Of a stretch of 64,000 nt of DNA, positions 16,355-55,289 are shown piece by piece. The position numbers and the translations under genes were made by a program. The stretch spans positions 186,001-250,000 of the IMG/VR virus record IMGVR_UViG_3300018080_008436; one strand, 5' to 3'. Numbering within the stretch: position 1 is the stretch's first letter; every line of letters starts with the position of its first letter. Below the pieces are notes generated by a model. The model had not been told where the DNA came from and did no database searches. It was given only the letters and a program-made list of their open reading frames with translations.

Positions 16355-16418
16355 TTCATCTAAATCAATGCTGATCGTTATTCTCTTTCATCTAAATCAG
16401 TGCTGATCGTTATTCTCT
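16355..16418. repeat. 32-bp tandem duplication
   Basis: TTCATCTAAATCARTGCTGATCGTTATTCTCT x2 with one mismatch. Confidence 0.9.
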
Positions 16419-17916: not shown

Positions 17917-17920
17917 AATT

Positions 17921-19453
17921 TTACCAATTATCTCCTCTTTCCCAAGTGTAAGTAATGTTCCCAGGAGTAGTAAATGAACCAAATTGATTGTCGTTTATGC
18001 GATAGTCACTTTTACTTCCAAGTGGAGCATCCAAACCAACAGTAAAACTTCTGGTTGTAAATGTTTGAGTTGTTGCAGGTCCGAATCTCTGAGCAGAATA
18101 AATGTTCCCATCTCTTAGTTTAACAAGATTGAAGTATTGTTTAAACGTAAATGTCCCATTGTCATAAAGATTATATGATCTTTGAATCTCAAGATAACGT
18201 GGGGGATGATCTGAAACATTTCTCCATTCTTCTTTATATATAAAAGTAGAGAAAGGTGATGCAGGTGGAGTATATAAACTATATCCGCCTGAACTTGCAC
18301 AAACTCTTTTCTTAACACCATTGTCTGTAGGTAAATTCCAAGTCTCCCCACACCAATCTATCGTTTCTGTTGCGCCTGCATTTGAAACAGTAAGTATCAT
18401 ATCAGGTTCACTATTTGGGCAACTAACTGGCCCAGGAAGATCTCCTCCAGATTCACTTGAAGAACTCTCAGATGCAGAACTCTCAGATGCAGAACTCTCA
18501 GATTGGCTAGATGAACTTGAACTACGCGCTCCACATTCAAAACATGCAAAGCCAATAACATTTCTATAGCTTGCATTAGGGTTATTTTTATATCCTGTCC
18601 TATCTACAGAAACAACATTTGAGCTAATTCTTGATCCCCCAGTATCATTACATTTTTGATTTATGTATTCATCTATACTGTTCTCAACTGCGGCGATAGC
18701 TTCTTCTTCAGTTTCATATGTATTAGGACCAGCAGTAAATGGTCCCCATGAAGTTTGATATGTTGGAGTTTGATATGGAGCATCATTTTGATCACAAACA
18801 GTACATTCTGGAGTCATTGCCTCATAGAACTCTCTTGACTCTAATTGAGGTGCTCCTTGGCTACAAGGATTAATATAGAATATATTGTGCTGATCGACAA
18901 TATTATCAAATCCGCCAGTTCCAGTCCAGTTATCTAATATCCAAGTTTCAAGTGCCCAATCTTCTCCGACAGTCCCTCCCCTAAACAACTCTCCAATCTG
19001 CCAATAACATTCTTCTCCGTCTGCCAAAACAGGCCATGTCGCTGATGAATCTGAGAAATCGCAAGTATTCACGTCAAATCCAACAAACCAAATGCTGTAC
19101 GCTTCTTGTGAACTTTCTGACACTTCACTTTGTTGATCTCCATCTCCTGACTCAGATGACTCTGAAACTTCTGATTCTGATCCTGTTGAAAGAGAATTTG
19201 ACCATGAACTCATGGAGACGCTACTTCTGGATACACTAGATAATGAAGAAGAAACATTTCCTTCTGATTCTGAACTAGCTGAACTAGTTGAAGATGAACT
19301 TTCAATATCACATGCAAGACATGAATCAAATGTTCCTTCTATTTCAAATGGATATGTATTAACGGCTTCAGTCACTTCGCCTATGTAATTATAACAGATA
19401 CCATCTATTTTGACGGATACTCCTTGATATTCTTTAAAAACTTTCATCGCCAT
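17921..19453 (-). CDS. Ser-linker protein with shared N-terminal module
   Basis: MKVFKEYQGVSVKIDGICYNYIGE...SCLACDIESSSS; Cys-rich modules between Ser tracts. Confidence 0.8.
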   Translation of the reverse strand: MAMKVFKEYQGVSVKIDGICYNYIGEVTEAVNTYPFEIEGTFDSCLACDIESSSSTSSASSESEGNVSSSLSSVSRSSVSMSSWSNSLSTGSESEVSESSESGDGDQQSEVSESSQEAYSIWFVGFDVNTCDFSDSSATWPVLADGEECYWQIGELFRGGTVGEDWALETWILDNWTGTGGFDNIVDQHNIFYINPCSQGAPQLESREFYEAMTPECTVCDQNDAPYQTPTYQTSWGPFTAGPNTYETEEEAIAAVENSIDEYINQKCNDTGGSRISSNVVSVDRTGYKNNPNASYRNVIGFACFECGARSSSSSSQSESSASESSASESSSSESGGDLPGPVSCPNSEPDMILTVSNAGATETIDWCGETWNLPTDNGVKKRVCASSGGYSLYTPPASPFSTFIYKEEWRNVSDHPPRYLEIQRSYNLYDNGTFTFKQYFNLVKLRDGNIYSAQRFGPATTQTFTTRSFTVGLDAPLGSKSDYRINDNQFGSFTTPGNITYTWERGDNW

Positions 19454-19463
19454 AATTTACTCC

Positions 19464-22058
19464 TTAGCATCCCCATCCTGAGGTTCCGCCATCGCCTCTT
19501 GCCCAAGATATAGTTATTCCATCATTAGTCGTCACTTTCCCTCCAAACATGTTGTTGCCAATTGCTCCATCCAAAGTAAATAAAGAAGCTCTCCCAGAGT
19601 GAGTTGACATATTATTAGTATGATTTGTTGTTGTCTGAGTAGAAGTTCCCCCAGTAGTCTTAATTCTTCTAAACTCTGCTGTATGTCCATTGTATGAGTC
19701 GATGTATTTGGATACAAAAACACGTTGATATGCTTGTGTCGGATGATATTGTGTAGTTGAGCCATACCTACCCTGCAATTGGAGAGAGTCTTTACTATTT
19801 GACAAAGAGAATCCAGCCCACGACTCCTCAGAAATAATCGTTCCAGTTCCTCCTGTGGTACAATTATAGGAACCACAAATCTCTTTAGTTTCTCCATTTG
19901 TCCATTCGCATCCCATGAAAGTTTTAGTGCCTCCACCAGAGAATGTCAGGGTAACATTAACTTTGGGGTTATCTTCATTTGTTACATCACATGCTTCATC
20001 ACATCTTTCTAGTGCGGCTTGTGACTCTGAAGAGCTTGATGAACTTACATTACCTTCAGATTCGGATGACTCTGAAGATGATGATTCACTAACTGAACTA
20101 TCTGAGTATCCATCAGATGATTCTGAACTACTTGATGAGTTATCGTCTTGTTTCCAAATATAAGTGTCACCAGCGCCTCCCTTCTCCCAAGAAATAACAG
20201 TTCCATCATCAAGAGTGACAGACGCTTTCATAGCAGGCCATTGGACTTGGGGCAACAGCCTCATAAGAGTGGAGCTTGGAAAATCTGGTTGATTTTCCGT
20301 CATTCCATTATAGCCTTTACTTATCTGATACGAGTTTCTGACTACAGTTGGGTTGTCTGAAGGGAAGTGATTAATATGACTCAAATCAACATTATAGTTG
20401 CTGTCATAGAAAAACTTAATTCTTCCATCAAATCTATAGGTTGATGGAGAATTAATATACAAATCTCCCTTGAAATAGAAATCCTTACTGGCAGTATTCC
20501 AATATTCACCATTCGCATTAACACTATAAGAATCTGGGCAAATTGCTTTAGTTTCGCCGCTAGACCAGTCACAACCTAAGAATGTCTTTGTCCCGCCACC
20601 AGAGAATGTCATCGTTACGTTGATTCTTGGATAGTCAGAATTATTACTAACATCACAACGGCATTCTTCAACTTCTGAAGATGAAGATGAACTCACATTG
20701 CCTTCAGATTCAGATGACTCTGAAGAGCTATTAGAACTATCTGAATAACCTTCCGAACTGGAAGATTCTGAATAACCTTCAGAACTGGAGGAACTCGAAC
20801 TTTGTGGGTTGTCGTAAAAATATCCAGGAGTTGTTCCAGTACCAGCATTCCAGACATTTCCACTATTCAATGGATATACCTCATTTGCATCTCCATAAAA
20901 GGTCCATGAAGCAAGAGTATCAACTATTGATGTATGTATTGCCCAGTAATTATTACCACTATCTTCACCATAGAATAAATAAACCCCAGTACCATTTTGA
21001 TAAACTGGATATCCATTATGAGTTTGATCTGTCTTATTATATGCTCCATTGAAATTAGGAGGACGACCTTCCATTGCGCCGATATCCCATGCAGAACCTT
21101 GAGGTCTAGAAGTTCCAATAGCATCAGTACTAAATGATCCAATAGTTGTGCCAGCGTCCCTGATATCTCCTCCTATTTTAGGGACAACATTAGTTCCAGG
21201 ATTTTCAAAACAATTAGCCGCTGTCTTTTGGATAATATTGCCTGATCCCAACCAATCATCCGCTGTATCATCTGAAGAACAACAATAGGTTTGAGTGATG
21301 GTTTGGGTAACTGTCCCTGAAGTGAACGCACTAAAATCAAAAGATGGACCTATAGACACGTTGTTTGTGGAAGTAACCGTTGATGTGACTGTTCCCGTCC
21401 CGTAATTCAGGCACTGAAAATAAAAACCATAATTACAATCACCTGTATTATATATGGTGTTATTAAACAAGTTTGCTGTCAACGATGAATCATTTGTACT
21501 GGACCCAAAAGACTGAAGCCCGACACCTGCACCGTTTGCTGAACTTGATTCGTGGTATACAATACAATTCCTTATTGTAGCCGAAGTTGTGCTGTTAACA
21601 GAAGCCATGAAGAAGAAATTGTTGATATTAGTTATCGAATTTGATATTCTAGTCACACAACCATCTATAATGGCTCCAGTCAATGTGCTTCCAGTTTGGT
21701 GCTGAACCTGCACAAGGGTAGATACAGAACCCGAAAAATCCGCATTAATCCTAATCCCTTCCACTCTGGTATAACTTGTTCGAACACCTATACCCACTGA
21801 TGAGTTAACCACACTAATATAAGCCCCATTCAAAGATGTCGTACCATCATGCCGATGACCAGATGCCGCATAAATGCGAGGATAGAGGGAAACCGTTGGG
21901 GTCGCCGTCCAACTCTGCATGTCAATAATACCCATATCAAATCCAGAATAGCATTCAGCCCACTGATCAGCACTTGCTTGATCATCAGCCCAGTTTTCCC
22001 AAGCTTGCAAGGTACTAAAATCACCACCGCTACTTTTAATTGTTTTTACTGTTGCCAT
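19464..22058 (-). CDS. beta-helix-like protein with Ser linkers (putative tailspike/fibre)
   Basis: TIKSSGGDFSTLQAWE, RVEGIRI, IRNCIVY, LFNNTIYN, SRPQGSAWDIGAME; duplicated C-terminal module. Confidence 0.75.
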   Translation of the reverse strand: MATVKTIKSSGGDFSTLQAWENWADDQASADQWAECYSGFDMGIIDMQSWTATPTVSLYPRIYAASGHRHDGTTSLNGAYISVVNSSVGIGVRTSYTRVEGIRINADFSGSVSTLVQVQHQTGSTLTGAIIDGCVTRISNSITNINNFFFMASVNSTTSATIRNCIVYHESSSANGAGVGLQSFGSSTNDSSLTANLFNNTIYNTGDCNYGFYFQCLNYGTGTVTSTVTSTNNVSIGPSFDFSAFTSGTVTQTITQTYCCSSDDTADDWLGSGNIIQKTAANCFENPGTNVVPKIGGDIRDAGTTIGSFSTDAIGTSRPQGSAWDIGAMEGRPPNFNGAYNKTDQTHNGYPVYQNGTGVYLFYGEDSGNNYWAIHTSIVDTLASWTFYGDANEVYPLNSGNVWNAGTGTTPGYFYDNPQSSSSSSSEGYSESSSSEGYSDSSNSSSESSESEGNVSSSSSSEVEECRCDVSNNSDYPRINVTMTFSGGGTKTFLGCDWSSGETKAICPDSYSVNANGEYWNTASKDFYFKGDLYINSPSTYRFDGRIKFFYDSNYNVDLSHINHFPSDNPTVVRNSYQISKGYNGMTENQPDFPSSTLMRLLPQVQWPAMKASVTLDDGTVISWEKGGAGDTYIWKQDDNSSSSSESSDGYSDSSVSESSSSESSESEGNVSSSSSSESQAALERCDEACDVTNEDNPKVNVTLTFSGGGTKTFMGCEWTNGETKEICGSYNCTTGGTGTIISEESWAGFSLSNSKDSLQLQGRYGSTTQYHPTQAYQRVFVSKYIDSYNGHTAEFRRIKTTGGTSTQTTTNHTNNMSTHSGRASLFTLDGAIGNNMFGGKVTTNDGITISWARGDGGTSGWGC

Positions 22059-22070
22059 AAATTATCTCTT

Positions 22071-22553
22071 TTAACTAGATGAGCTACTTTCATCCTCCGT
22101 CATATCTGTCAAATTAAATGGATTTCCTGGTTGCTCTGCTGTTTTCTTCTTCCTCAAAACGGGAGTCTCTGTTTCTCTGTCATTCATAGCGCTCTCAGTC
22201 GTTCCTAGTAATCCTAGTGTGGCCACTGACATTAGGTCTCTTCTAAATCTATATTTAGAACGAGTTGTCATTACTGGACTTGACAATCCGTCAGATGATT
22301 CGGATTCTGAACCAGAATTTAAAACTTCATCATATTGGGCATATGGATAAACAGCAACTGGATGAGGTTCTCCTGCATCATATTTCGCTTGCAATTCGGC
22401 TTCCAAAACTTCATCCTCTATTGCTATTCTTAGAAAATATGCTTTTTCTAGATCACTCCAATCGCTATGATCTAATTTCACACAAATTATATCGTTCTGT
22501 TTTTTAATATTTTTATCTGTTGGTCTATTGTCAACTAATGCTATGAGTCCCAT
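22071..22553 (-). CDS. hypothetical protein, paralog of 47274-47675
   Basis: Shared M.LIALV.N...VKLD.S.W...E...F.RI...D..LE..L......GE.HP..VYPYA. Confidence 0.75.
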   Translation of the reverse strand: MGLIALVDNRPTDKNIKKQNDIICVKLDHSDWSDLEKAYFLRIAIEDEVLEAELQAKYDAGEPHPVAVYPYAQYDEVLNSGSESESSDGLSSPVMTTRSKYRFRRDLMSVATLGLLGTTESAMNDRETETPVLRKKKTAEQPGNPFNLTDMTEDESSSSS

Positions 22554-22567
22554 AATTTTACCTCTTT

Positions 22568-25500
22568 TTATTCCTCAAAACCATCTCCAAAATACTGCTC
22601 TGGGAATGCCTCTGAGCTACTTGATTCTGAATATTCTTCGGAACTACTACTTGATTCTGAATATTCTTCGGAACTACTACTTGATTCAGATTCTGAACTT
22701 GAACTTTCGCTTTCTGAACTACTTGATTCGCTTTCTGAACTACTTGATTCTGAATATTCTTCGGAACTACTACTTGATTCAGATTCTGAACTTGAACTTT
22801 CGCTTTCTGAACTGCTTGATTCGCTTTCTGAACTGCTTGATTCGCTTTCTGAACTTTCACTCTGGGATGAGGACGATTCAGACTGAGAACTACTGGACTC
22901 TGACTGAGATGATTCACTCTGGGAACTACTGGATTCTGATTTGGAACTACTGGATTCACTTTGAGATGATTCACTCTGGGAACTACTAGATTCTGACTGA
23001 GAACTATCACTCTGGGATGAGGACGATTCAGATTTGGAACTACTAGATTCTGACTGAGAACTATCACTCTGAGAACTACTAGATTCTGATTTGGAACTAC
23101 TAGATTCTGACTGAGAACTATCACTCTGAGAACTACTAGAACTTTCTGAATAACCTTCTGAACTAGTTGAAGAACTTTCTGAATATTGTTCAGAACTAGA
23201 ACTTGATTCATTTGGACAATCATATGGAGCAGTTGGAACATCAAAATTATCAGTCCAAACAGCTAAACCTTTAACAATTCTAACTTCATCTATATGACCA
23301 CCAAAATATGTTCCACCTCTGGTATAATATCCTATGTAAGATTGTTGGGTAAAATTAGTAAATGTACCTGAGTATGAGCCAGTTGATGTTTGAGCTACAC
23401 CATCAATATACAAGGTCTGCGTATTATTATCTGCATTATGAACAAACGCAATATGCGTCCATGTACTGGAAGAAATCGCACTATTACTCATAATTTCAAA
23501 ATCCCAAGATCCTCCAGTAAGATGACCAGCATACACAACTCCGTTCAATGCTACATAAACTGTGAATAAGTTGTTTGTATCTGTACGAAATTCTATAAGT
23601 CCTCCGCCAGCAGTATATCGTGCCCAACAATCAAACGTAAGGCTCCCAGATCCGATGTTCCAATCATCGCTGTCAGGAATTGATAGGTAATCAGAATTAC
23701 CATCTAACAAGAGACTTGCTCCACCAAATTTACTTTGAGCAGTATCAACTTGAGCAGTGCCATTTGCCGTAACAACATGTTTACTGTCAGATTCATCTGG
23801 GAAGTTAGTTGATCCATCCTCTCCGTCGCAGTGAAGAAGAAGTTTTGTATTCAAGCAAACTTGTTCAGTTGACTCAGATGAACTTTCTGAGTAACCTAAC
23901 GAAGACGAACTAGAACTCTCTGAATAACCTTCTGAACTACTACTTGATTCTGAACTTGAACTTTCGCTTTCTGAACTGCTTGATTCGCTTTCTGAACTGC
24001 TTGATTCGCTTTCTGAACTGCTTGATTCGCTTTGTGAACTGCTTGATTCGCTTTGTGAACTATTTGACTGAGAGCTACTTGACTCTGATTGAGATGACTC
24101 ACTCTGAGAACTAATACTTTCAGTAAAAAGATCACAAGGAAGATAGATGTGATTTATATTCTCAGTTGAACTACTTGAGCTTTCTGATTTGGAACTACTT
24201 GATTCAGAGTAATTTTCTGAAGAACTTGAACTTCCTGAGCTTTCAGATTGAGAACTTTCAGATTGGGACGACTCTGATTGAGAACTTGAACTTTCAGATG
24301 AACTACTGGATTGTGACGACTCAGATTGCGAAGAAGAACTTTCAGATTGCGAAGAAGAACTCTCTGAGAATCCTTCAGATGAACTACTGGATTGTGACGA
24401 CTCAGACTGCGAAGAGGAACTTTCAGATTGCGAAGAAGAACTCTCTGAGAATCCTTCAGATGAACTACTGGATTGTGACGACTCAGACTGCGAAGAGGAA
24501 CTTTCAGACTGCGAAGAAGACGATTCTGATTGACTACTTTCTGAATACCCACCTGAACTACTAGACTCTGATTGTGATGACTCTGATTGTGATGACTCTG
24601 AGCTAATACTCTCAGTAAACAAGTCACACTCTCTATACCTATGTCGAACATTCTCGGTTGAACTACTGGATGAGTTACTACTAGAGGATTCACTACTAGA
24701 GGATTCACTACTTATGCTTTCAGTAAACAATTCGCAAGGAAGATAGCCGAAGTGAACATTCTCAGTTGAGCTACTTGAAGACTCACTTGATTCGGATTGA
24801 GATGATTCACTTTGAGATGAAGACGACTCAGATTCAGATTTTGATGATTCACTCTGAGAACTGTCTGATTGTGATGAACTGGATTCAGATTTTGATGATT
24901 CACTCTGACTACTTGAGCTTTCTGACTTACTGGATTCTGATTGACTACTGTCAGACTGCGAACTGTCTGATTGACTACTGTCAGACTGCGAACTTGAGGA
25001 CTCAGATTTTGACGATTCACTTTGAGATGATTCAGAATAAGAACTTATACTTTCAGTAAACAAATCACATGGAGCGTACTCATGATTTACATTCTCAGTG
25101 GAAGAACTGCTTGAACTCTCTGATTGAGAACTCTCACTTTGACTAGAAGATGATTCTGATTGAGAGGAGCTTGATTCTGAATAATTCTCAGAACTTGTGC
25201 TTGAACTCTCAGAATAACCTTCACTTGAAGTCGATGAACTTGAATCCTTGGAAGAACTTGAACTTGAATCCTTGGAAGAACTTGAAGAACTTACAGGACA
25301 AACTCCAGGCTCTAACGTTGGCGCAGGAGATGTTCCTGTATTTACAAACCATTCCAATGAACTTGGTGATACCCATGGTGCTGTTACGGCTGTATCGTAT
25401 ACAGATACTCCATCTAAGATATCAGACATCGTCCATTTACTTGAATCTGAAAAATATAAAAACCTAGATCCGTTGTAATAATATGTTGTATCATTATGTA

Positions 25501-28500
25501 CTCCAGCACTCAAATAATTCCCATTATAGCTCCCATCTCCCGCCAATTCTGCACAATATCTAATTGCCAAATCTTCGCTAGATATTGAGCTTGTACTGGA
25601 TGACTCAGAATAATTCTCTGATGAACTTGACTCAGATTGAGAGGAACTTGATTCTGATTGAGATGATTCAGATTGAGAACTACTTGATTCACTTTGAGAC
25701 GAAGAGCTTTCGGATTGACTACTTGATGATTCAGACTGAGATGATTCAGACTGAGATGAAGATGATTCAGACTGAGAAGAACTTGACTCACTTTGTGATG
25801 ACTCAGATTGAGAACTTTCAGATTGACTACTATCTGATTGTGATGAGCTTGACTCAGATTGAGATGAAGAACTCTCAGACTGAGAGCTTATACTCTCTGT
25901 AAATAAATCACATTCTGCATACTCAAAATTGACATTCTCAGTTGAAGAACTGCTTGAATCACTTTGAGAGCTACTGGATTCAGAATAATTTTCAGAAGAG
26001 CTACTGGATTCGCTTTTTGAGCTTGAAGATTCTGACTGAGATGAAGAACTTTCAGAATAATTTTCAGAAGAACTACTGGATTCGCTTTGCGAACTTTCTG
26101 ATTGAGATGACTCACTCTGAGATGATTCTGATTGAGAACTACTTGACTCAGAATAATTTTCTGATGAACTCGAACTTCTTGAGCTTTCGCTTTGCGAACT
26201 ATCTGATTGTGATGAACTTGACTCAGATTGAGATGAAGAACTCTCAGACTGAGAACTTATACTCTCTGTAAATAAATCACATTCTGCATACTCAAAATTG
26301 ACATTCTCAGTTGAAGAACTGCTTGAATCACTTTGAGAGCTACTGGATTCAGAATAATTTTCAGAAGAACTACTGGATTCGCTTTGTGAGCTTGAAGATT
26401 CTGACTGAGATGAAGAACTTTCAGAATAATTTTCAGAAGAACTACTGGATTCGCTTTGCGAACTTTCTGATTGAGACGACTCACTCTGAGATGATTCTGA
26501 TTGAGAACTACTTGACTCAGAATAATTTTCTGATGAACTCGAACTTCTTGAGCTTTCGCTTTGCGAACTATCTGATTGTGATGAGCTTGACTCAGATTGA
26601 GATGAAGAACTCTCAGACTGAGAACTTATACTCTCTGTAAAAAGCGCACACTCTTCATATACATAATTAATGTTCTCAGTTGAACTACTAGACGATTCTG
26701 ATTGACTACTACTTGACTCCGATTGAGAACTACTCGACTCCGATTGAGAACTACTTGATTCTGATTGAGATGAAGAACTCTCAGAATAGTTTTCTGAAGA
26801 ACTTGACGATTCAGATTGGCTACTGCTTGATTCACTCTGAGATGAAGACGATTCAGATTGAGACGATTCACTCTGAGATGAGGATGATTCAGATTTGGAA
26901 CTACTTGATTCTGATTGAGATGATTCACTCTGAGATGACTCTGATTTACTGCTACTTGATTCACTTTCAGATTGAGAACTCTCGGACAAAGATGAACTTG
27001 ACTCGCTTTGAGAACTTTCACTCTGAGAGCTACTGGACTCGCTTTGAGATGAGCTTGATTCAGACTGAGAACTTTCAGATTGAGAACTAGAGCTTTCTGA
27101 TTGGCTACTGGAACTTTCAGATTGAGATGAACTCGATTCAGATTGAGATGATTCACTTTGGCTACTTTCGCTTTGTGAACTGCTTGATTCTGATTGACTA
27201 CTTGAACTCTCTGATTGAGATGACTCACTCTGAGAACTAATACTCTCGGTAAATAAATCACAAAGTGCGTACTCAAAATTAACATTCTCAGTTGAACTAC
27301 TTGAACTTTCACTTTTTGAACTAGAGCTTTCGGAGACTGAGCTTTCGGAGACTGAGCTTTCAGAATAATTCTCAGAACTTGTACTTGACGATTCTGAATA
27401 ATTTTCACTTGAAGTCGATGAACTTTCAGAACTCGCAGAATAAACTTCGCTTGAAGTCGATGAACTTGAATCCTTGGAAGAACTTGAACTTGAATCCTTG
27501 GAAGAACTTGAAGAACTTACAGGACAAACTCCAGGTTCTAGTGTTGGAGCAGGAGGAGTCCCAGAAATTACAAACCATTCCAATGAACTCGGTGACACCC
27601 ATGGTTCTGTTGAGGCCGTATTATATGCAGAAGTACCTCCTAGAACATCAGACATTACCCATTTACTTGAATCTGAGAAATATAAGAACCTAGATCCGTT
27701 GTAATAATATGTTGTATCATTATGTACTCCAGCTATCTGGTAATTTCCATTAAATGATATGTCTCCAGCAAGCTCAACACAAATAGTTCCTGGCAGATTC
27801 CCACTAGAAATTGAAGAACTTGAAGAAAACTGCTCTGAACTACTTGAACTTCCTGATGACTCAGAACTATTTGAATATTGTTCTGATGAACTACTTGATT
27901 CAGATTTGGAACTAGACGATTCTGATTGAGATGAGGAACTTTCTGACTGGGATGATTCTGACTGTGAAGACTCGCTCTGAGAACTGCTGGATTCACTTTG
28001 GCTACTAGAACTTTCACTCTGGGAACTGCTAGATTCTGATTGGCTACTGTCAGACTGGGAGCTTTCGCTTTGAGAACTTTCAGATTGCGAACTAGAAGAT
28101 TCACTGTCACTCTGGGACGAATCGCTCTTTGAACTACTAGATTCGCTTTGAGATGATTCGCTTTGAGATGATTCGCTTTGAGATGATTCAGATTGGGAAC
28201 TCTCACTTTGACTAGATGATGATTCAGATTTACTACTGCTTGATTCAGACTGGGAACTTTCTGACTGACTGCTACTCGATTCACTCTGAGAGGAGGAACT
28301 TTCTGACTGAGAACTCTCGGATTGAGACGACTGAGAAGATTCTGATTGAGAGCTTGAGCTTTCTGACTGGGAGCTATCACTTTGGCTACTGCTACTCTCT
28401 GACTGAGAAGATTCAGATTGTGAACTACTTGATTCAGATTGTGAACTACTTGATTCAGATTGTGAACTGCTACTCTCTGACTGAGATGATGAGCTTTCTG

Positions 28501-30151
28501 ATTGAGAACTTTCAGATTTACTACTGCTCGATTCACTTTGGGAAGACTCAGATTTGGATGATTCAGATTGGGATGATGAACTCTCTGATTTTGAACTACT
28601 GGATTCGGATTGAGACGATTCACTCTTACTACTACTGGACTCGCTTTGAGAGCTTTCGGATTGAGACGAAGAACTTTCAGACTGCGATGATGAACTCTCG
28701 GATTGAGATGACTCAGATTGGGAACTCTCAGATTGTGAGCTAGAAGACTCGCTATCACTCTGGGACGACTCAGATTGGGAACTGCTAGACTCAGACTTAC
28801 TACTCTCAGATTGAGACGATTCTGACTGTGAACTTTCACTTTGAGAACTACTTGATTCACTTTGAGAGGATGAACTCTCGGACTGACTACTCTCACTCTT
28901 TGAACTACTTGACTCTGATTGGGACGACTCACTCTTTGAACTACTTGACTCTGATTGGGACGACTCACTCTGAGACGATTCCGACTGTGAACTTTCACTT
29001 TGAGAACTGCTTGATTCTGATTGAGAACTTTCGGACTGACTACTTTCACTCTTTGAACTACTTGATTCACTCTGAGATGATTCACTCTGAGATGATTCAC
29101 TCTGAGATGATTCACTCTGAGAGCTACTTGATTCCGATTGAGAACTCTCACTTTGAGAACTTTCAGAATGCGCCAAACTTGAAGTTGATGAACTTGAATC
29201 CTTGGAAGAACTTGAACTTGAATCCTTGGAAGAACTCGAAGAGCTTACAGGACAAATTCCGTTCTCTGTTACTGGGGCTGGAGGAGTTCCATTATCAACA
29301 AACCAAGACAAATACCCAGGACCAATCCAAGGGGGAACTAAGTTTGTACTATACGCAGATACCCCTCCAAGAGTCGTTGACAATGTCCATCTACTAAGAT
29401 TCGAATAAAATAGAAATCTTGATCCACTGGAATAATAAACTGTCTCATTGTAAATGCCAACAGCACTGTAAGTAGCATTATAAGAAGTATCTCCAGCATG
29501 TTCCACACAAACATCATCTATCAAACCGCCACTAGAAATTGAAGAACTTGAAGAAAACTGCTCTGAACTACTTGATTCAGATTGAGATGAGGAGCTTTCA
29601 CTATATAGTTGAGATGAGGAGCTACTTTCACTTGACTCACTTGAGATACTTCTGGAACTATCGGAATAATTCTCTGATGAACTTGACTCGCTTGAGATAC
29701 TACTTGAACTCTCAGATGATCCAGAGCTAACACTATATTGTTCTGAACTACTTGAGCTACTTTCACTAGAGCTACTATCACATAAAGTTGGGAGACGAAC
29801 AATAGTTATTGAAGGCCAAACGCCTGTTGTAGTTTGAGCATCAATAAATGTTTGAACCTGTGGTATTGTTGGGTCAGGAGTTATGATATCTGTGAACACC
29901 CAAGCATATTCACAACGAACATCATTAATTGATCTGTCAACATTGCCATCAAAATCAGCATCAGGTATCTCAGGAAGTCTAGCAACAGTTATCGATGGCC
30001 AAACGCCTGTTGCTGTTTGAGCATCAACAAAATCTTGAACCTGAGCTATACTTGGGTTAGGAGTAAATTGATCTACAAAAACCCAAGCATAATAAATACG
30101 AACATCATTTATAGTGATGTCTTTGTCATTGTCGAAATCTGCACAACCCAT
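22568..30151 (-). CDS. 2527-aa serine-rich repeat protein: dockerin-like N-terminus, three repeated domains, LamG-like domain
   Basis: Uninterrupted 7.6-kb frame; DFDNDKDITIND / DFDGNVDRSIND loops; (SQSESSS)n tracts; LLLHCDG...SLLLDGNSDYLSIPDSDDW LamG-type segment. Confidence 0.9.
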   Translation of the reverse strand: MGCADFDNDKDITINDVRIYYAWVFVDQFTPNPSIAQVQDFVDAQTATGVWPSITVARLPEIPDADFDGNVDRSINDVRCEYAWVFTDIITPDPTIPQVQTFIDAQTTTGVWPSITIVRLPTLCDSSSSESSSSSSEQYSVSSGSSESSSSISSESSSSENYSDSSRSISSESSESSSSSQLYSESSSSQSESSSSEQFSSSSSISSGGLIDDVCVEHAGDTSYNATYSAVGIYNETVYYSSGSRFLFYSNLSRWTLSTTLGGVSAYSTNLVPPWIGPGYLSWFVDNGTPPAPVTENGICPVSSSSSSKDSSSSSSKDSSSSTSSLAHSESSQSESSQSESSSSQSESSQSESSQSESSQSESSSSKSESSQSESSQSESSSSQSESSQSESSQSESSQSESSSSKSESSQSESSSSKSESSQSESSSSQSESSSSQSESSQSESSQSESSKSESSSSQSESSQSDSESSSSQSESSQSESSQSESSSSQSESSSSQSESSQSESSSSKSESSQSESSSSKSESSSSQSESSKSESSQSESSSSKSESSQSESSSSQSESSSSQSESSSSQSESSSSQSESSQSESSSSQSDSSQSESSSSQSESSQSSQSESSQSESSSSQSESSSSQSESSQSESSSSKSESSSSQSESSQSESSQSESSQSESSQSESSSSKSDSSQSDSESSSSQSESSQSESSQSDSSQSESSSSQSESSSSQSESSSSQSESSQSESSQSESSSSQSESSSSKSESSSSSEQYSNSSESSGSSSSSEQFSSSSSISSGNLPGTICVELAGDISFNGNYQIAGVHNDTTYYYNGSRFLYFSDSSKWVMSDVLGGTSAYNTASTEPWVSPSSLEWFVISGTPPAPTLEPGVCPVSSSSSSKDSSSSSSKDSSSSTSSEVYSASSESSSTSSENYSESSSTSSENYSESSVSESSVSESSSSKSESSSSSTENVNFEYALCDLFTESISSQSESSQSESSSSQSESSSSQSESSQSESSQSESSSSQSESSSSQSESSSSQSESSQSESSSSQSESSSSQSESSQSESSSSLSESSQSESESSSSKSESSQSESSQSESSSSKSESSSSQSESSQSESSSSQSESSSSQSESSSSSENYSESSSSQSESSSSQSESSSSQSESSSSQSESSSSSTENINYVYEECALFTESISSQSESSSSQSESSSSQSDSSQSESSRSSSSSENYSESSSSQSESSQSESSQSESSQSESSSSSENYSESSSSQSESSSSQSESSSSSENYSESSSSQSDSSSSSTENVNFEYAECDLFTESISSQSESSSSQSESSSSQSDSSQSESSRSSSSSENYSESSSSQSESSQSESSQSESSQSESSSSSENYSESSSSQSESSSSKSESSSSSENYSESSSSQSDSSSSSTENVNFEYAECDLFTESISSQSESSSSQSESSSSQSDSSQSESSQSESSQSESSSSQSESSSSQSESSQSESSSSQSESSSSQSESSSSQSESSQSESSSSQSESSSSENYSESSSTSSISSEDLAIRYCAELAGDGSYNGNYLSAGVHNDTTYYYNGSRFLYFSDSSKWTMSDILDGVSVYDTAVTAPWVSPSSLEWFVNTGTSPAPTLEPGVCPVSSSSSSKDSSSSSSKDSSSSTSSEGYSESSSTSSENYSESSSSQSESSSSQSESSQSESSSSSSTENVNHEYAPCDLFTESISSYSESSQSESSKSESSSSQSDSSQSDSSQSDSSQSESSKSESSSSQSESSKSESSSSQSDSSQSESSKSESESSSSQSESSQSESSESSSSSTENVHFGYLPCELFTESISSESSSSESSSSNSSSSSTENVRHRYRECDLFTESISSESSQSESSQSESSSSGGYSESSQSESSSSQSESSSSQSESSQSSSSSEGFSESSSSQSESSSSQSESSQSSSSSEGFSESSSSQSESSSSQSESSQSSSSSESSSSQSESSQSESSQSESSGSSSSSENYSESSSSKSESSSSSTENINHIYLPCDLFTESISSQSESSQSESSSSQSNSSQSESSSSQSESSSSESESSSSESESSSSESESSSSESSSSSEGYSESSSSSSLGYSESSSESTEQVCLNTKLLLHCDGEDGSTNFPDESDSKHVVTANGTAQVDTAQSKFGGASLLLDGNSDYLSIPDSDDWNIGSGSLTFDCWARYTAGGGLIEFRTDTNNLFTVYVALNGVVYAGHLTGGSWDFEIMSNSAISSSTWTHIAFVHNADNNTQTLYIDGVAQTSTGSYSGTFTNFTQQSYIGYYTRGGTYFGGHIDEVRIVKGLAVWTDNFDVPTAPYDCPNESSSSSEQYSESSSTSSEGYSESSSSSQSDSSQSESSSSKSESSSSQSDSSQSESSSSKSESSSSQSDSSQSESSSSQSESSQSESSSSKSESSSSQSESSQSESSSSQSESSSSQSESSESESSSSESESSSSESESSSSESESSSSSEEYSESSSSESESSSSESESSSSESESSSSSEEYSESSSSSEEYSESSSSEAFPEQYFGDGFEE
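25830..26640. repeat. 369-bp tandem repeat, about 2.2 copies
   Basis: The same sequence recurs at 25838, 26207 and 26576; antisense ORFs are duplicated at the same offset. Confidence 0.85.
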
Positions 30152-30162
30152 TTTATTTTCCT

Positions 30163-33100
30163 TTAACTACTCGAACTTGATGAAAACAAGTTCGAACTTG
30201 ATGACGACACATTATTGAATGACTCTGAGCTAGAACTCTTAACCATCGCGTTTGTGCAATCAAACTCAATATCTTCAAAACTTTCAATCTGGAAGAAATT
30301 AATAATCGTATAAGTATGATATCCTGGGACCGTCCCTCCCAAATAAGAACCTGTAAAATTCGTTGGACCACCTTGATTAACAAGTGTCATTCTTGCTGTG
30401 ATACTAGGATTCTCTACAGGGTCTATCCTATTAATTGGTATATGCACTGCCGCTACCGTCTTGACAGGACTTATATCATAATTATAATTGTATGTGAAAC
30501 TATCTCCCCCATTAAATGACACGCTATCAGAAGCTATCTCCTCAGTTTCAGATCCTGGCTCCAAATAAGTAAGAAGAACGGATAGTTGTTTCAAACATTG
30601 TGCGTCAAGTGAACTCGATGAACTATCATCAGAATATCCCTCGGACGAACTCTCTGAATAACTCGATGAACTCTCTGAATATTGCTCAGATGAAGAACTA
30701 GAGCTACTTGAATCACTTGAATTGCTCTGAGACGATTCAGATTGAGAACTCTCTGATTGTGATGACTCAGATTGAGAACTGCTGGACTCACTTTGGGAAC
30801 TTTCAGATTGAGAACTATCACTCTGAGAACTGCTGGATTCAGATTGAGAACTCTCAGATTGAGAACTGGAAGACTCAGACTTAGAGGAAGAAGACTCACT
30901 CTCGGAACTTGAACTTTCTGAATATTGTTCAGAACTTGAACTTGACTCAGAACTAACGGAACTAACAGAATATCCTCCAGATGACGATGAACTAGATGAG
31001 TCAATACTTGAGCTACTTGAGCTACTTGAACTACTGCTGTAATTAGCATTCGCACATTCTTCACAATTGTTATAAATACTGTCAATGTTATGAGTAATTG
31101 GCTTGTCTACCAAACCAACTCTTTGGTAACAGACTCCATTTACGCTGATAAATTCTGCTTCGGTATATGGAACAACTATATTTCCGTTCCATTCATCGAT
31201 ATCGAGTGCCGTAACAACGTCTTCTATTGGACATCCAAGACCATACAATCCACTAGATGGTCCTGCAAAATTCAATCCTACAATCTTTAATTCTCCACCG
31301 ACTTCAATCAATACAGTAGAACCTGAATCTCCTCCCTGCCCCATTCTTGTATCAGCACTATATAATATTTGGTCAGTAAAATATGCCTGTAAATTGGTTC
31401 CAGACCCATCTCCATAATTGACTGTTGCCGCAGTAAACTTCTGGGTCAATGTTGCAAAAGGAGGTGGAGTAATTCCTGTTGTTCTGCCACTCTTGTAAAC
31501 TTGGTCCCCAATATTGTATTCAGATTTATTGGAAAATGCGAAAGGACCATGTCCAACTTCAAGGATATTAGTAGCCGCATCGTCAACATCAACTGAGAAA
31601 ATCGCACAGTCTACTGAATTACTAGCAACTCCGCTTCCTCCGAACTTCATAGCTACGGCTCTTTTCACCTGACCCGCTCTATCAGTAGGAGAGACACCTC
31701 CATCATTTGGAGATGGCTGTAACATCCACAAACCAGTTGTATCGGTACTACCCTCTTCTCCAAGGAAGGCTTCCTCATAAACATGAGGGTCACTGTGGTT
31801 ACTTGATATGTTCGAAAAGCTAAACTCTCCTCCACTGTAAATGACTGTAACACTATGAGTATGAGGATTCGTAGTATCTGGATCGCCACCTGACAACAAC
31901 GATCCTCCAGATGAAACAACAACACTAGAAGATATCCCATCTATCAAATTCCCAGCCTGTTGCCCAGTTATTGTAACTAAATGATAATGGCTATATCCCC
32001 AAGATTCCCCTGTACTGAAATCAAGGAAAAAATAAGTTGTTGAATAAGGAGTTCTATAATCAGGATCATATTTCAGGCCAGCACAGTGATTATTAGTAAG
32101 TGCGACCAATGAATCGTCTGTAGTATCTTTTACAATAGCTCCAAGAGTACATGCTGTTCCACTTTCCTCTATGGCACTAATTCCTCCTTGAAGTGGTCTG
32201 TACTTTTCATCATGAGGAGGACATCCGCCACCAGCACCATCTTTACAACTTCCATGAGCGAACAGTTTCTCAACTACAATAATATCTGTTTTGGTGTTAG
32301 TTGACAAACGCTCTGGAATAAGATCATTTTCGTCTAGCTCAGAAATATCAACTTTTCTCTCTACACCGACAACTACGCATGGTTCTCCAGTATCTACACC
32401 ATCAACAATCTTAGTTCCTGCCATGGCCATAACAACATTAGCTTTTGGCGCTATTTCAGCAACATACAATTCATTGGCATCTCTTTCTTCCTGACTATCA
32501 TATTCAGGAGATCTTGGGACGGCTCTTGCCGTAGCTTGACTGAAACTCCTTGGATTAGAGCACATTGTAAATTCAATATTACCATAGCTTGAAGAACTTG
32601 AAGAACTTGAAGAGTCTATCGATGAACTAGAACTGGAAGATTCTGAACTTTCAGATTGTGAACTTTCGGAATAACCTTCAGAAGAAGAACTAGAAGATTC
32701 TGAACTCAAACTCTGAGATGATTCAGAATATTGTTCAGAAGAAGAACTAGACTTACTTGAATCAGATTGTGAACTGTCAGAATAATTTTCGGAACTTGAG
32801 CTAGATTCGCTTGAAACGCTTTGTGAACTGTTAGATTGTGAACTGTCAGAGTAGCCTTGGCTAGACTTACTTGAATCAGACAATGAACTGTCAGATTGTG
32901 AACTGTCAGAATACTCTTCAGACGAACTTGACGAACTTGGAGAACTATCCGAACTGACAGAACTTACAGAGTACTCTTCAGAAGAAGAACTTGAACTACT
33001 GTGACTAGAACTACTTTCACACAGAGTTGGAAGACGAACAATAGTTATTGAAGGCCAAACACCTGTTGCTGTCTGAGCATCAATAAACGCCTGAACTTGC

Positions 33101-33390
33101 GGTATTGTTGGATCAGGAAATGTAAGGTCTGTGAACACCCATGCAAAATAACAACGGACATCATTGATTGTCCTACTTCCATTACCATCAAAATCAGCAT
33201 CAGGGATTTCAGGAAGTATATCTGCGGTTATTGATGGCCAAACACCTGAAGCTGTTTGAGCGTCAATGAAATCTTGAACTTGGGATAATGTTGGATTTGG
33301 AAAATATCTATCCATGAAAACCCAAGCATAATAAACGCGAACGTCATTTATATTCAAGTCAAAATTATGTTCGAAATCTGCACAACCCAT
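30163..33390 (-). CDS. Ser-rich protein with dockerin-like N-terminus and trypsin-like (S1) serine protease domain
   Basis: CTLG...LTNNHCA (His), VDCAIF (Asp), VYKSGRTTG, GGDSGST (Ser). Confidence 0.88.
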   Translation of the reverse strand: MGCADFEHNFDLNINDVRVYYAWVFMDRYFPNPTLSQVQDFIDAQTASGVWPSITADILPEIPDADFDGNGSRTINDVRCYFAWVFTDLTFPDPTIPQVQAFIDAQTATGVWPSITIVRLPTLCESSSSHSSSSSSSEEYSVSSVSSDSSPSSSSSSEEYSDSSQSDSSLSDSSKSSQGYSDSSQSNSSQSVSSESSSSSENYSDSSQSDSSKSSSSSEQYSESSQSLSSESSSSSSEGYSESSQSESSESSSSSSSIDSSSSSSSSSYGNIEFTMCSNPRSFSQATARAVPRSPEYDSQEERDANELYVAEIAPKANVVMAMAGTKIVDGVDTGEPCVVVGVERKVDISELDENDLIPERLSTNTKTDIIVVEKLFAHGSCKDGAGGGCPPHDEKYRPLQGGISAIEESGTACTLGAIVKDTTDDSLVALTNNHCAGLKYDPDYRTPYSTTYFFLDFSTGESWGYSHYHLVTITGQQAGNLIDGISSSVVVSSGGSLLSGGDPDTTNPHTHSVTVIYSGGEFSFSNISSNHSDPHVYEEAFLGEEGSTDTTGLWMLQPSPNDGGVSPTDRAGQVKRAVAMKFGGSGVASNSVDCAIFSVDVDDAATNILEVGHGPFAFSNKSEYNIGDQVYKSGRTTGITPPPFATLTQKFTAATVNYGDGSGTNLQAYFTDQILYSADTRMGQGGDSGSTVLIEVGGELKIVGLNFAGPSSGLYGLGCPIEDVVTALDIDEWNGNIVVPYTEAEFISVNGVCYQRVGLVDKPITHNIDSIYNNCEECANANYSSSSSSSSSSSIDSSSSSSSGGYSVSSVSSESSSSSEQYSESSSSESESSSSKSESSSSQSESSQSESSSSQSDSSQSESSQSESSSSQSESSQSESSQSESSQSNSSDSSSSSSSSEQYSESSSSYSESSSEGYSDDSSSSSLDAQCLKQLSVLLTYLEPGSETEEIASDSVSFNGGDSFTYNYNYDISPVKTVAAVHIPINRIDPVENPSITARMTLVNQGGPTNFTGSYLGGTVPGYHTYTIINFFQIESFEDIEFDCTNAMVKSSSSESFNNVSSSSSNLFSSSSSS

Positions 33391-55279: not shown

Positions 55280-55289
55280 TTTACTTCTC

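What the first reader, a model, noticed from the sequence alone, without database searches (positions are those of the whole stretch)
22568..30151. 2527-aa acidic Ser-repeat protein punctuated by eight STEN..Y..C.LFTESIS motifs
The (SQSESSS)n tracts use mixed Ser codons. They are interrupted by 8 copies of a 20-aa single-Cys motif, many ENYS/EGYS/EQYS units and three copies of a ~75-aa domain. The spaced Cys could cross-link chains into a long fibre. The layout recalls the glycosylated serine-rich repeat adhesins of streptococci. A 369-bp duplication shows ongoing length change.
Basis: partly seen in the sequence, partly recalled or inferred. Interest (0 to 1): 0.6.

Follow-up and report, generated by a model that had tools for sequence, protein, structure and literature searches.

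The report
Giant serine-rich modular protein of a megaphage
This is a real 2527-residue, half-serine protein of a bacteriophage with a genome of over 520 kb; it strings sugar-binding-type modules on long acidic serine spacers, is most likely a flexible and possibly sugar-coated surface fibre, and only resembles the streptococcal serine-rich adhesins rather than belonging to them.

Summary
Window 22568-30151 (-) is one 2527-aa ORF with 48.8% Ser and net charge -339. It has eight STEN..Y..C.LFTESIS motifs, three copies of a Cys-bounded domain and a 369-bp tandem repeat. The gene lies in a 524.7-kb phage contig from sediment. The phage carries 59 tRNAs and a tmRNA.

The gene is the extreme member of a phage-wide family: 33 of 477 ORFs join shuffled modules through poly-Ser linkers. 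A 4276-aa paralogue shares its domain A, motif and tail. The next gene, a protease, shares its N-module. The repeated domain has no Pfam, PHROG or PDB counterpart, but it folds confidently as an all-beta domain also found in phage proteins.

It is not an SRRP: there is no signal/AST region, no LPXTG and no SecA2/Y2. The analogy gains circumstantial support from a glycan island 24-50 kb away on the same strand (Maf-like transferase, NeuB/PseI-like, PseF-like, glycosyltransferases, sulfotransferase).

Best reading: a long flexible adhesin-like virion fibre, probably O-glycosylated (confidence 0.42). Repeat copy number, expression, glycosylation and Cys cross-linking remain untested.

The parts
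22568..30151 (-). Whole ORF (P0001), 2527 aa, 48.8% Ser, net charge -339
   Evidence: identical in the JGI contig Ga0180433_10000003
29780..30151 (-). N-module, aa 1-124: two 62-aa repeats (64% identical). Each starts with a DFDxDxDxxIND loop that fits the EF-hand/dockerin calcium-loop pattern, followed by a helix-like stretch. The module begins MGCADF.
   Evidence: It is 76% identical to the N-terminus of the upstream 1075-aa protease gene. Language-model neighbours are dockerin type I clusters at 0.91, which is weak. No Pfam hit.
29237..29539 (-). Domain A copy 1 (aa 205-305; Cys215 and Cys300 bound it)
27812..29236 (-). Longest uninterrupted Ser array (aa ~306-780), made of SSQSE/SSSSQSE/SSSSKSE units
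27509..27811 (-). Domain A copy 2 (aa 781-881). The AlphaFold2 model of this copy is all-beta with eight strands, pLDDT 92.4.
27236..27295 (-). STEN motif 1 (aa 953-972)
   Evidence: (family D9)
26624..26683 (-). STEN motif 2 (aa 1157-1176)
26255..26314 (-). STEN motif 3 (aa 1280-1299)
25886..25945 (-). STEN motif 4 (aa 1403-1422)
25829..26684 (.). 369-bp tandem repeat, 2.3 copies at 96% identity. It carries STEN motifs 2-4. A second assembly ends inside it, at window 26354.
25283..25585 (-). Domain A copy 3 (aa 1523-1623)
25043..25102 (-). STEN motif 5 (aa 1684-1703)
24710..24769 (-). STEN motif 6 (aa 1795-1814)
24602..24661 (-). STEN motif 7 (aa 1831-1850)
24110..24169 (-). STEN motif 8 (aa 1995-2014)
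23216..23854 (-). LamG / concanavalin-A-like lectin domain (aa ~2100-2312)
   Evidence: Pfam Laminin_G_3, E 1.4e-18. PHROG matches down to 8e-34; those with an annotation are named virion structural protein or baseplate wedge subunit. 263 phage records match by tblastn.
22571..22624 (-). C-terminal tail SSSSEAFPEQYFGDGFEE. The EAFP[ED]QY core is shared with the 4276-aa paralogue.
30163..33390 (-). Upstream gene (P0093, 1075 aa): same N-module, poly-Ser linkers, a protease-like domain and a C-terminal module shared with the 508-aa gene
   Evidence: (phrog_20754 protease, 3.4e-36)
33405..34931 (-). 508-aa poly-Ser protein (35% Ser). Its N-terminus partly matches domain A (E 1e-4).
16378..22553 (-). 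Four downstream co-directional genes (534, 510, 864 and 160 aa), each with short Ser-rich linkers or tracts; the 510- and 864-aa genes share a C-terminal module
54362..56600 (-). Two candidate glycosyltransferase genes: a weak GT1-like gene and an MptE-like/Maf-type gene. They form the near edge of the glycan island that continues beyond the window.

Best explanation
P0001 is a structural or surface-acting protein of a bacteriophage with a genome of at least 525 kb. It is a very long, flexible, strongly polyanionic tether of poly-Ser/Glu/Gln arrays, about 1700 residues in all. The tether carries binding modules: three copies of a small all-beta 'domain A' and one LamG lectin domain. One end is a duplicated calcium-loop N-module, proposed here as the anchor. 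The other end is a short conserved aromatic tail.

It is the extreme member of a combinatorial family in this phage. That family joins shuffled modules (LamG, domain A, NHL propeller, protease, ConA-like glycosidase-like) through poly-Ser linkers. The proposed working is as follows. The N-module fixes the protein to the virion or to a partner. The Ser arrays act as an extended spacer and are the likely substrate of the phage's own glycosylation island. The lectin-type modules make weak multivalent contacts with polysaccharide on host cells or particles. The eight invariant single-Cys beta-hairpin-like motifs are nodes for contact or cross-linking.

Shown: the ORF, its modules, the paralogue family, the phage context, and the presence of glycan and nonulosonic-acid genes. 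Inferred: virion location, anchoring by the N-module, glycosylation of the Ser arrays, carbohydrate binding, and any role of the Cys.
For: Phage context: the window is part of a 476-kb IMG/VR record cut from a 524,692-bp contig. The record has 59 tRNAs and a tmRNA. The window also holds a DNA polymerase and an RtcB ligase.

The LamG domain is significant. Its annotated PHROG relatives are named virion structural protein or baseplate wedge subunit. LamG recurs 7 times in the genome, mostly in poly-Ser proteins.

Family: 33 of 477 ORFs carry poly-Ser linkers. The seven genes from 16378 to 34931 are co-directional, separated by gaps of about 10-15 nt or short overlaps, and all carry Ser-rich linkers or tracts. 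P0093 shares the N-module at 76% identity. P0002 (4276 aa, 52% Ser) shares domain A twice, the STEN motif twice and the C-tail.

Domain A folds at pLDDT 92.4. Its nearest predicted structures are Uroviricota hypothetical proteins at TM 0.75-0.77.

Selection on the protein: Ser arrays are encoded by scrambled codons, and motif residues are kept through synonymous change.

Glycan genes on the same strand include an MptE-like/Maf-type protein, NeuB/PseI-like, PseF-like cytidylyltransferase, two GT2, GT1/GT4-like and a sulfotransferase.

Precedents: hair-like appendages on jumbo phages (PMC13282480; PMC5259590). Virion glycosylation in mycobacteriophages is cited.
Against: There is no direct evidence of expression; no RNA run holds the gene. 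No recognisable capsid, terminase or sheath gene could be placed near it, because Pfam terminase and sheath models find nothing in this genome. 'Virion' therefore rests on analogy.

The N-module has no Pfam dockerin or EF-hand hit and no detectable relatives. The glycan island could instead serve DNA modification or host-surface conversion. It lies 24-50 kb away, not adjacent.

The Maf-type hit is below Pfam's cut-off (25.5 vs 34.6 bits). The order and number of repeats rest on a single short-read assembly.
Confidence: 0.42

Rival explanations
1. The protein is not a virion part. It is made in, or released from, the infected cell as a polyanionic gel, matrix or scaffold. In this reading it is a stickers-and-spacers low-complexity protein: the Tyr/Phe units and the STEN motifs are the stickers, and other poly-Ser proteins such as the protease are recruited to it.
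For: About 68% of the protein is low-complexity. There are 26-28 regularly sprinkled SE.Y/F units and 8 conserved hydrophobic motifs. P0001 has both an N-module and possible docking motifs, and P0093 shares the N-module. There is no signal peptide or hydrophobic stretch.
Against: Net charge -339 opposes self-association without counter-ions. LamG and domain A look like extracellular binding modules. The self-association test of the motif gave no answer.
Confidence: 0.15
2. The protein is a precursor. The adjacent protease, which shares its N-module, cuts it at the STEN motifs or in the linkers. This would release the lectin modules or Ser-rich fragments.
For: The protease-like gene lies immediately upstream and carries the same N-module. 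The motifs recur at intervals. Head proteins of phiKZ-like jumbo phages are extensively processed (PMC13282480).
Against: Most inter-motif segments hold only Ser arrays and no domain. No cleavage consensus could be tested. The paralogues P0002 and P0092 carry only 2 and 1 motifs.
Confidence: 0.08
3. It is a true bacterial SRRP-type adhesin: cargo of a prophage, exported and wall-anchored by the host.
For: IMG/VR labels the record 'provirus'. It has Ser-rich repeats flanking non-repeat regions, and glycosyltransferases lie nearby.
Against: There is no signal/AST region, no LPXTG, and no SecA or SecY in the genome. The flanks beyond the record are more phage-type modular genes. Poly-Ser linkers pervade clearly phage-specific genes.
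Confidence: 0.03
4. The long ORF is partly an assembly artefact, with repeat order or number wrong, or it is a non-expressed low-complexity region.
For: A second assembly breaks inside the 369-bp repeat, and 2 of its 3 mismatches are in its last 33 nt. Both ends of this phage's large contigs fall in Ser-repeat genes. Short-read contigs in three runs come only in pieces of 130-775 bp, and none of the listed pieces spans the stretch. There are no RNA data.
Against: There is no frame break over 7.6 kb. Unique domains lie in one frame in a sensible order. The first 3.8 kb recurs in a contig from a second sample, differing only at 2 bases in that contig's last 33 nt. All unique pieces are exact in three runs. 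The protein-level selection signal holds. Paralogues have the same architecture.
Confidence: 0.1

Closest known systems
Serine-rich repeat glycoproteins (SRRPs: GspB, Fap1, PsrP, Lactobacillus reuteri SRRP) of Gram-positive bacteria
   Same: Both are very long Ser-rich repeat regions flanking non-repeat binding regions. Both have glycosyltransferase genes in the same genome. Both have a presumed fibre or adhesin role.
   Different: P0001 has no ~90-aa signal peptide or AST domain, no LPXTG anchor and no SecA2/SecY2/Asp locus (definition in PMC6973325). Its repeat unit is SSQSE/SSSSQSE and strongly acidic. It has several binding modules. It is encoded by a phage.
Polyserine linkers (PSL) of modular carbohydrate-active enzymes in marine Gammaproteobacteria (Saccharophagus degradans, Cellvibrio japonicus, Teredinibacter turnerae)
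   Same: In both, Ser runs separate independently folding modules, including carbohydrate-binding ones (PMC2386152). The design recurs across many proteins of one genome (33 of 477 ORFs here).
   Different: Here the linkers reach about 475 residues (from my own knowledge, known PSLs are tens of residues long), are periodic with Gln/Lys and Glu, and make up two thirds of the protein. There are no signal peptides. The host is a phage genome.
Large LamG-bearing virion structural and baseplate proteins of cyanophages and other phages (PHROGs 701, 18802, 13163, 32294)
   Same: The LamG domain is homologous (E 1e-17 to 2e-21). There are tblastn hits in 263 phage records, mostly Synechococcus and other cyanophages.
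   Different: Only the LamG module is shared. The poly-Ser arrays, domain A, N-module and STEN motif are not.
Hair-like or whisker appendages of jumbo phages (Tenacibaculum PTm1, Erwinia Y3, Pectobacterium CBB)
   Same: These are large phages decorated with long flexible fibres on capsid or tail (PMC13282480; PMC5259590). This is the morphological counterpart proposed here.
   Different: No sequence relation was found. Morphology is unknown for this uncultured phage.
O-glycosylation of flagellins by Maf-type transferases with pseudaminic/legionaminic acid, and phage-encoded virion glycosylation in mycobacteriophages
   Same: The phage encodes an MptE-like/Maf-type protein, a NeuB/PseI-like synthase and a PseF-like cytidylyltransferase, together with an obvious Ser-rich potential acceptor.
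   Different: The link between enzyme and substrate is untested. The hits are below equivalog cut-offs. The role of Maf proteins is recalled from general knowledge, not tested here.
Dockerin type I / EF-hand calcium-loop modules
   Same: Each 62-aa repeat opens with D-x-D-x-[DN]-x-D-x-x-I-x-D followed by a hydrophobic helix-like stretch. Language-model neighbours are dockerin clusters.
   Different: No Pfam Dockerin_1 or EF-hand hit. The repeats are 62 aa rather than 22 aa. No cohesin partner is known.

Membership tests
SRRP (serine-rich repeat glycoprotein adhesins) | Long atypical N-terminal signal peptide (about 90 aa) plus AST domain; the KxYKxGKxW motif used as the probe is recalled from general knowledge | tested here: not met
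   The protein starts MGCADFDND. It has no hydrophobic stretch of 12 or more residues and no KxYKxGKxW.
SRRP (serine-rich repeat glycoprotein adhesins) | C-terminal LPXTG cell-wall anchor | tested here: not met
   No LPx[TSA][GAN] anywhere. The protein ends ...EAFPEQYFGDGFEE.
SRRP (serine-rich repeat glycoprotein adhesins) | Linked accessory Sec system (SecA2, SecY2, Asp1-3) | tested here: not met
   Pfam SecA_DEAD and SecY find nothing in the 476-kb record, while the controls ring.
SRRP (serine-rich repeat glycoprotein adhesins) | SRR1 - binding region - long SRR2 layout | tested here: not met
   Here there are five globular modules and eight short motifs spread along units of 5-7 residues. 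The SRRP layout is from PMC6973325.
SRRP (serine-rich repeat glycoprotein adhesins) | O-glycosylation of the Ser repeats by GtfA/GtfB | not testable with these tools
   Glycosyltransferase genes are present in the genome. No GtfA/B assignment was made and there are no protein data.
Polyserine-linker modular proteins | Ser runs that separate independently recognisable domains, recurring in many proteins of the genome | tested here: met
   Ser arrays lie between the N-module, domain A (three copies) and LamG. 33 of 477 ORFs have a window of at least 60% Ser.
LamG / concanavalin-A-like lectin superfamily (the domain only) | Significant match to Pfam Laminin_G_3 over the domain | tested here: met
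   E 1.4e-18 and 67.9 bits against a cut-off of 27.6, covering profile positions 1-142 of 151.
Dockerin type I | Match to Dockerin_1, meaning two 22-aa calcium-loop/helix repeats | tested here: not met
   No Pfam hit at E <= 1. Only the loop pattern and weak language-model neighbours point this way.
Phage virion fibre / decoration protein | Physical presence in virions, attached to capsid or tail | not testable with these tools
   Only indirect evidence: PHROG relatives of the LamG part are annotated as structural. No proteomics, and the phage is uncultured.
Phage virion fibre / decoration protein | Location in a morphogenesis gene module | tested here: inconclusive
   The neighbours are modular lectin-like or protease proteins and LamG paralogues. 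Terminase and sheath models find nothing anywhere in this genome.

The most novel reading that the evidence does not exclude
This half-megabase phage may build a mucin-like coat of hairs or a mesh from a combinatorial family of poly-Ser-tethered modules. Its own nonulosonic-acid/sulfate glycan island would decorate the Ser (and perhaps Tyr or Cys) residues. The invariant single-Cys STEN hairpins and the calcium-loop N-module would act as docking or cross-linking nodes. This would be a phage-encoded analogue of a cellulosome-like scaffold fused with a mucin, used to capture hosts or particles in sediment.
Probability: 0.15. Interest if true: 0.8.

Novelty: new variant of a known kind. Interest (0 to 1): 0.55.

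Why it matters
Little is known about how the largest phages meet their hosts. Their biggest genes are mostly unannotated. Here, a phage of at least 525 kb devotes 7.6 kb, and 12.8 kb in a paralogue, to proteins that are half serine. It re-uses the same linker in 7% of its ORFs and carries a sizeable glycan-synthesis island.

If the Ser arrays are glycosylated virion fibres, this would extend protein O-glycosylation and mucin-like design to megaphages. It would also give a testable adhesion mechanism for uncultured sediment phages.

The work also defines three uncatalogued parts: domain A (an all-beta fold with about 90 representative relatives and no Pfam, PHROG or PDB counterpart), the duplicated calcium-loop N-module, and the 20-aa single-Cys motif.

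Practically, it shows that these Ser-repeat genes are where megaphage assemblies break. This affects estimates of genome completeness and circularity.

Tried and rejected
- **Motif self-association.** Complex prediction on two copies of a 41-aa STEN-motif window (alignment A8) gave no answer: score 0.03 against a mark of 0.42, with the partner's fold uncertain. This is not evidence either way.
- **Domain A against solved structures.** Foldseek against PDB found nothing at E <= 0.001. VIA wide gave a best Z of 6.2, to a discontinuous part of DNMT5, which is within the range of chance.
- **First domain A model.** It used only 5 sequences, reached pLDDT 55.7 and was discarded.
- **N-module.** No useful PDB sequence match. 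No Pfam or PHROG hit. The word-based protein searches found no relatives among candidates of 591-1881 aa or of 69-219 aa.
- **STEN motif.** It occurs in no other IMG/VR contig apart from this phage. The word-based search found no protein of 1390-4422 aa with it. These searches have limited sensitivity, so absence is not proven.
- **JGI metagenome scan with the N-module.** It returned only the source contig itself, so it is not independent support.
- **Placing a morphogenesis module.** Two large neighbours of the presumed structural region (2638 and 2513 aa) have no match in 50,697 phage records. Pfam terminase and sheath models find nothing in the genome. The gene's position relative to a morphogenesis module could not be set.
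- **Promoter and terminator scans of 16200-36100.** At chance level.
- **Nine tandem ~245-aa paralogues.** No PDB relative by profile.
- **Sec-dependent export or an SRRP identity.** Considered and rejected.
- **Another genetic code.** Considered and rejected. One tRNA has a CUA anticodon, but the ORF and its neighbours read cleanly in table 11 and the gene ends in TAA. No other code was used.
Full report
**1. What is in the sequence**

Window 22568-30151 on the minus strand is one uninterrupted ORF of 2527 codons, ATG to TAA. An AGGA box sits in the 11-nt gap after the stop of the upstream gene.

The product (P0001) is 48.8% Ser, 12.4% Glu and 7.4% Gln. It has 395 acidic and 56 basic residues, giving net charge -339. 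1722 residues lie in windows of at least 40% Ser. About 197 units are SSQSE, SSSSQSE or close variants.

- There are eight copies of STEN[VI]x[FHY]xYxxC[DEA]LFTESIS, at aa 953, 1157, 1280, 1403, 1684, 1795, 1831 and 1995.
- There are 26-28 SE.Y/F units.
- There are three copies of a repeated domain.
- There is a 369-bp tandem repeat at 25829-26684, with 2.3 copies at 96% identity.

The repeated domain is 86 aa from Cys to Cys, rather than about 75 aa.

The Ser arrays are not recent slippage products. 67 SSSQSESS octapeptides are written in 62 different codon strings. Ser codon usage equals that of the rest of the genome. Only a few short tandem blocks are more than 96% identical.

**2.

- **The N-module.** Residues 1-124 are two 62-aa repeats, 64% identical. 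Each opens with a D-x-D-x-[DN]-x-D-x-x-I-x-D loop that fits the EF-hand/dockerin calcium-loop pattern, followed by a hydrophobic helix-like stretch. Pfam does not recognise it. Language-model neighbours are dockerin type I clusters at score 0.91, which is a lead only.
- **The LamG domain.** Residues ~2100-2312 are a LamG/concanavalin-A-like domain (Laminin_G_3, E 1.4e-18). Its PHROG relatives that carry an annotation are named virion structural protein or baseplate wedge subunit. It matches 263 phage records, mostly cyanophages and Rhizobium phages.
- **The C-terminal tail.** The protein ends in a short aromatic tail, EAFPEQYFGDGFEE.

**3. Domain A**

A profile of five copies was searched against 1.84 billion representative proteins. 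It found 89 proteins at E <= 1e-3 and five at E <= 1e-10. These have very different architectures. One has a T9SS sorting domain, one has RCC1 repeats, and one has a RING finger.

No member matches any Pfam or PHROG family. With an 84-sequence alignment, AlphaFold2 gives a confident all-beta model with eight strands (pLDDT 92.4, pTM 0.82).

The model has no convincing solved counterpart. Foldseek found nothing, and the best VIA Z was 6.2. It does superpose on predicted structures of Uroviricota hypothetical proteins at TM 0.75-0.77.

The two bounding Cys are conserved in all five phage copies but not across the wider family. I could not inspect the coordinates, so an intradomain disulfide is only a guess.

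**4. The 20-aa motif**

Ten strict copies exist: eight in P0001 and two in P0002. They keep S, T, E, N, Y, C, F, T, E, S, I and S invariant. Positions 6-8, 10-11 and 13 vary.

The invariant residues carry synonymous differences: Leu TTA/CTT/TTG, Thr ACC/ACA/ACT, Glu GAG/GAA and Ile ATT/ATA. The peptide, not the DNA, is what is conserved.

The alternating V-x-F-x-Y, then a turn carrying the Cys, then L-F-T-E-S-I, suggests a beta-hairpin. This is inference.

A pattern scan of IMG/VR found the motif only in this phage, including one degenerate copy in a third protein, P0092. A word-based protein search found no other carrier. A fold test of self-association gave no answer.

**5. Context**

The window is bases 186001-250000 of a 476,248-bp IMG/VR record. 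That record is a trimmed piece of JGI contig Ga0180433_10000003, which is 524,692 bp from sample 3300018080.

The record carries 59 tRNAs, including five tRNA-Ser that together read all six Ser codons, and a tmRNA. The window also holds a family-A-type DNA polymerase and an RtcB ligase. The record has no SecA or SecY. This is a megaphage.

The 'provirus' label is doubtful. A second contig (IMGVR_UViG_3300017991_005548, 296 kb, from another sample) continues beyond the record's end with more genes of the same modular kind.

That contig matches the region at 99.975% over 11.8 kb and stops at window 26354, inside the 369-bp repeat. Two of its three mismatches are in its last 33 nt. So the first 3.8 kb of the gene is reproduced in a second sample. 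The repeat is where assemblers fail.

The end of the own record, and by coordinate arithmetic one end of the 524.7-kb contig, fall inside the Ser arrays of the paralogue P0002.

Three public runs from three studies hold the gene: two sediment metagenomes and one seawater metagenome. Two of these runs gave nearly the same pieces and may not be independent. Their short-read contigs give exact pieces of 130-775 bp. None of the listed pieces spans the stretch laid, and no listed piece lies wholly within the tandem repeat. Local sequence is therefore solid. Order and copy number of repeats rest on one assembly.

**6. A family, not a singleton**

The seven genes from 16378 to 34931 are co-directional, with gaps of about 10-15 nt or short overlaps. 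All carry Ser-rich linkers or tracts between different modules.

- The 1075-aa upstream gene (P0093) has the same N-module, at 76% identity and also starting MGCADF. It also has a protease-like domain (phrog_20754, E 3.4e-36) and a C-terminal module shared with the 508-aa gene.
- The 534-aa gene has a GH54-type ConA-like fold match.
- The 864-aa and 510-aa genes share a C-terminal module that also ends P0092.
- P0002 is 4276 aa and 52% Ser. It combines an NHL propeller, two domain A copies, two STEN motifs, three beta-rich repeats and the same EAFP[ED]QY tail.

Genome-wide, 33 of 477 ORFs have poly-Ser linkers, in four clusters. LamG occurs seven times, mostly in such proteins. Domain A occurs only in P0001 within the own record, plus a partial match at the start of the 508-aa gene.

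**7. Glycan genes**

These lie on the same strand, starting 24 kb from the gene:
- a weak GT1-like gene and an MptE-like/Maf-type gene (Pfam 1.2e-5, below cut-off; PHROG 'sialyltransferase' 7.6e-9; 26 of the 30 nearest named atlas clusters share the MptE-like family set);
- nine tandem ~245-aa paralogues with a faint GT2 signal;
- just beyond the window, a sulfotransferase, a NeuB/PseI-like synthase, a PseF-like cytidylyltransferase, two GT2, a methyltransferase and GT1/GT4-like genes.

From general knowledge, Maf-type enzymes add nonulosonic acids to Ser/Thr of flagellins. A half-Ser protein is therefore an obvious candidate acceptor. Nothing here links enzyme to substrate, and the island could serve DNA or host-surface modification.

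**8. Explanation**

I read P0001 as a long flexible polyanionic fibre of the phage particle, or at least an extracellular-acting product. In this reading the N-module is the anchor and the Ser arrays are an extended, probably O-glycosylated spacer. Domain A (three copies) and LamG act as multivalent carbohydrate-type binding modules. The STEN motifs act as contact or cross-link nodes. Confidence is 0.42.

Section 1 to 7 show the ORF, the modules, the family, the phage context and the glycan genes. Location, anchoring, glycosylation, ligand and the role of the Cys are inferred.

Precedents are the hair-like appendages on jumbo phages (PMC13282480, PMC5259590) and phage-encoded virion glycosylation (reference list seen).

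The rivals are an intracellular or released gel or scaffold, a precursor cut by the adjacent protease, a host-type SRRP, and an assembly artefact. They are weighed in the Rival explanations section.

**9. Comparison with known kinds**

P0001 works most like an SRRP or a mucin. It is not an SRRP, because four defining features were tested and not met (definition in PMC6973325).

Its design principle is that of polyserine-linker modular proteins of marine polysaccharide degraders (PMC2386152). Here it is taken to an extreme of length and charge and moved into a phage.

I found no paper that combines polyserine with phage tail fibres, or serine-rich with huge phages, in the held library.

**10. 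Verdict**

The feature is real. It is a new variant of a known kind: a Ser-rich modular fibre or adhesin, here in a megaphage with three uncatalogued modules. Interest is 0.55.

Noticed in passing
window 6972-7352 (tmRNA); tRNA genes at 9503-11212, 36350-37873 and 51945-53206: The window holds a phage-encoded tmRNA (tag AKKVIEFPTASAVAA) and 16 tRNA genes. The whole record has 59 tRNAs, including five tRNA-Ser, three tRNA-Glu, three tRNA-Gln and one tRNA with a CUA (amber-reading) anticodon. The genes studied read cleanly in table 11, so no recoding was assumed.
   Followed up: partly
own record end (G000 474143-476248); L005:1179-14009; contig Ga0180433_10000003: The record labelled 'provirus, 98% complete' is a trimmed piece of a 524,692-bp contig. 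The own record, and by coordinate arithmetic one end of that contig, end inside the Ser arrays of the 4276-aa paralogue P0002. A 296-kb contig from another sample starts inside P0001's 369-bp repeat. The Ser-repeat genes are the breakpoints of the assemblies, and the true genome is larger than 525 kb.
   Followed up: partly
L013 (G000 250001-268000), just beyond the window; window 54362-56600: A glycan island: sulfotransferase, NeuB/PseI-like synthase, PseF-like cytidylyltransferase, two GT2, a SAM methyltransferase, GT1/GT4-like genes and an MptE-like/Maf-type gene. Its target (virion protein, DNA or host surface) is unknown.
   Followed up: partly
window 57301-63834 (-): Nine tandem paralogous genes of about 240-270 aa (9-24% identical to the first). 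One has a faint GT2 signal (E 0.008). There is no PDB relative by profile. Function unknown.
   Followed up: partly
window 40877-46457 (-): Six tandem paralogous genes of ~290-330 aa. One matches a PHROG named virion structural protein (8e-35). Several carry LamG matches and short Ser linkers. They look like an array of alternative binding proteins.
   Followed up: partly
window 30163-33390 (-), P0093: A protease-like protein carries the same N-module as P0001. Both begin MGCADF. In eukaryotes (from general knowledge) an MGC start is an acylation signal; here it is unexplained. P0093 also contains a ~45-aa Cys mini-domain (GxCY...C..C), which also opens the 510-aa and 534-aa genes at 17921-19453 and 16378-17982.
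   Followed up: no
P0001 aa 136-2508 (SE[NGQE][YF]S units); L013:2024-2965 (-): The 26-28 Tyr/Phe units sit in an acidic context (Glu at -2). A Sulfotransfer_3-family gene lies in the glycan island. Tyrosine sulfation, or sulfated glycans, is an untested idea. The presence of Phe in some units argues against a strict Tyr requirement.
   Followed up: no
window 36440-37315 (-): A DUF559/HNH-type endonuclease gene with HTH domains is wedged between tRNA genes. It is probably a mobile homing endonuclease.
   Followed up: no
window 12412-13680 (+) and 3-1397 (-): An RtcB tRNA-splicing ligase (PHROG E 9e-131) and a DNA polymerase. The polymerase's nearest relatives in the phage collection are only ~41% identical and come from unannotated faecal phage contigs. 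The phage lineage is distant from anything cultured.
   Followed up: no
window 50451-51869 (-): A 472-aa protein with DUF285 repeats (Pfam E 6e-25), a repeat type named after Mycoplasma proteins of unknown function. It is another candidate surface-interaction protein in the same block.
   Followed up: no
window 22528-29397, other frames and + strand: Many ORFs of 100-470 aa overlap the gene in other frames (for example 27733-29151). They are by-products of the Ser-codon-rich repeats, not genes.
   Followed up: yes
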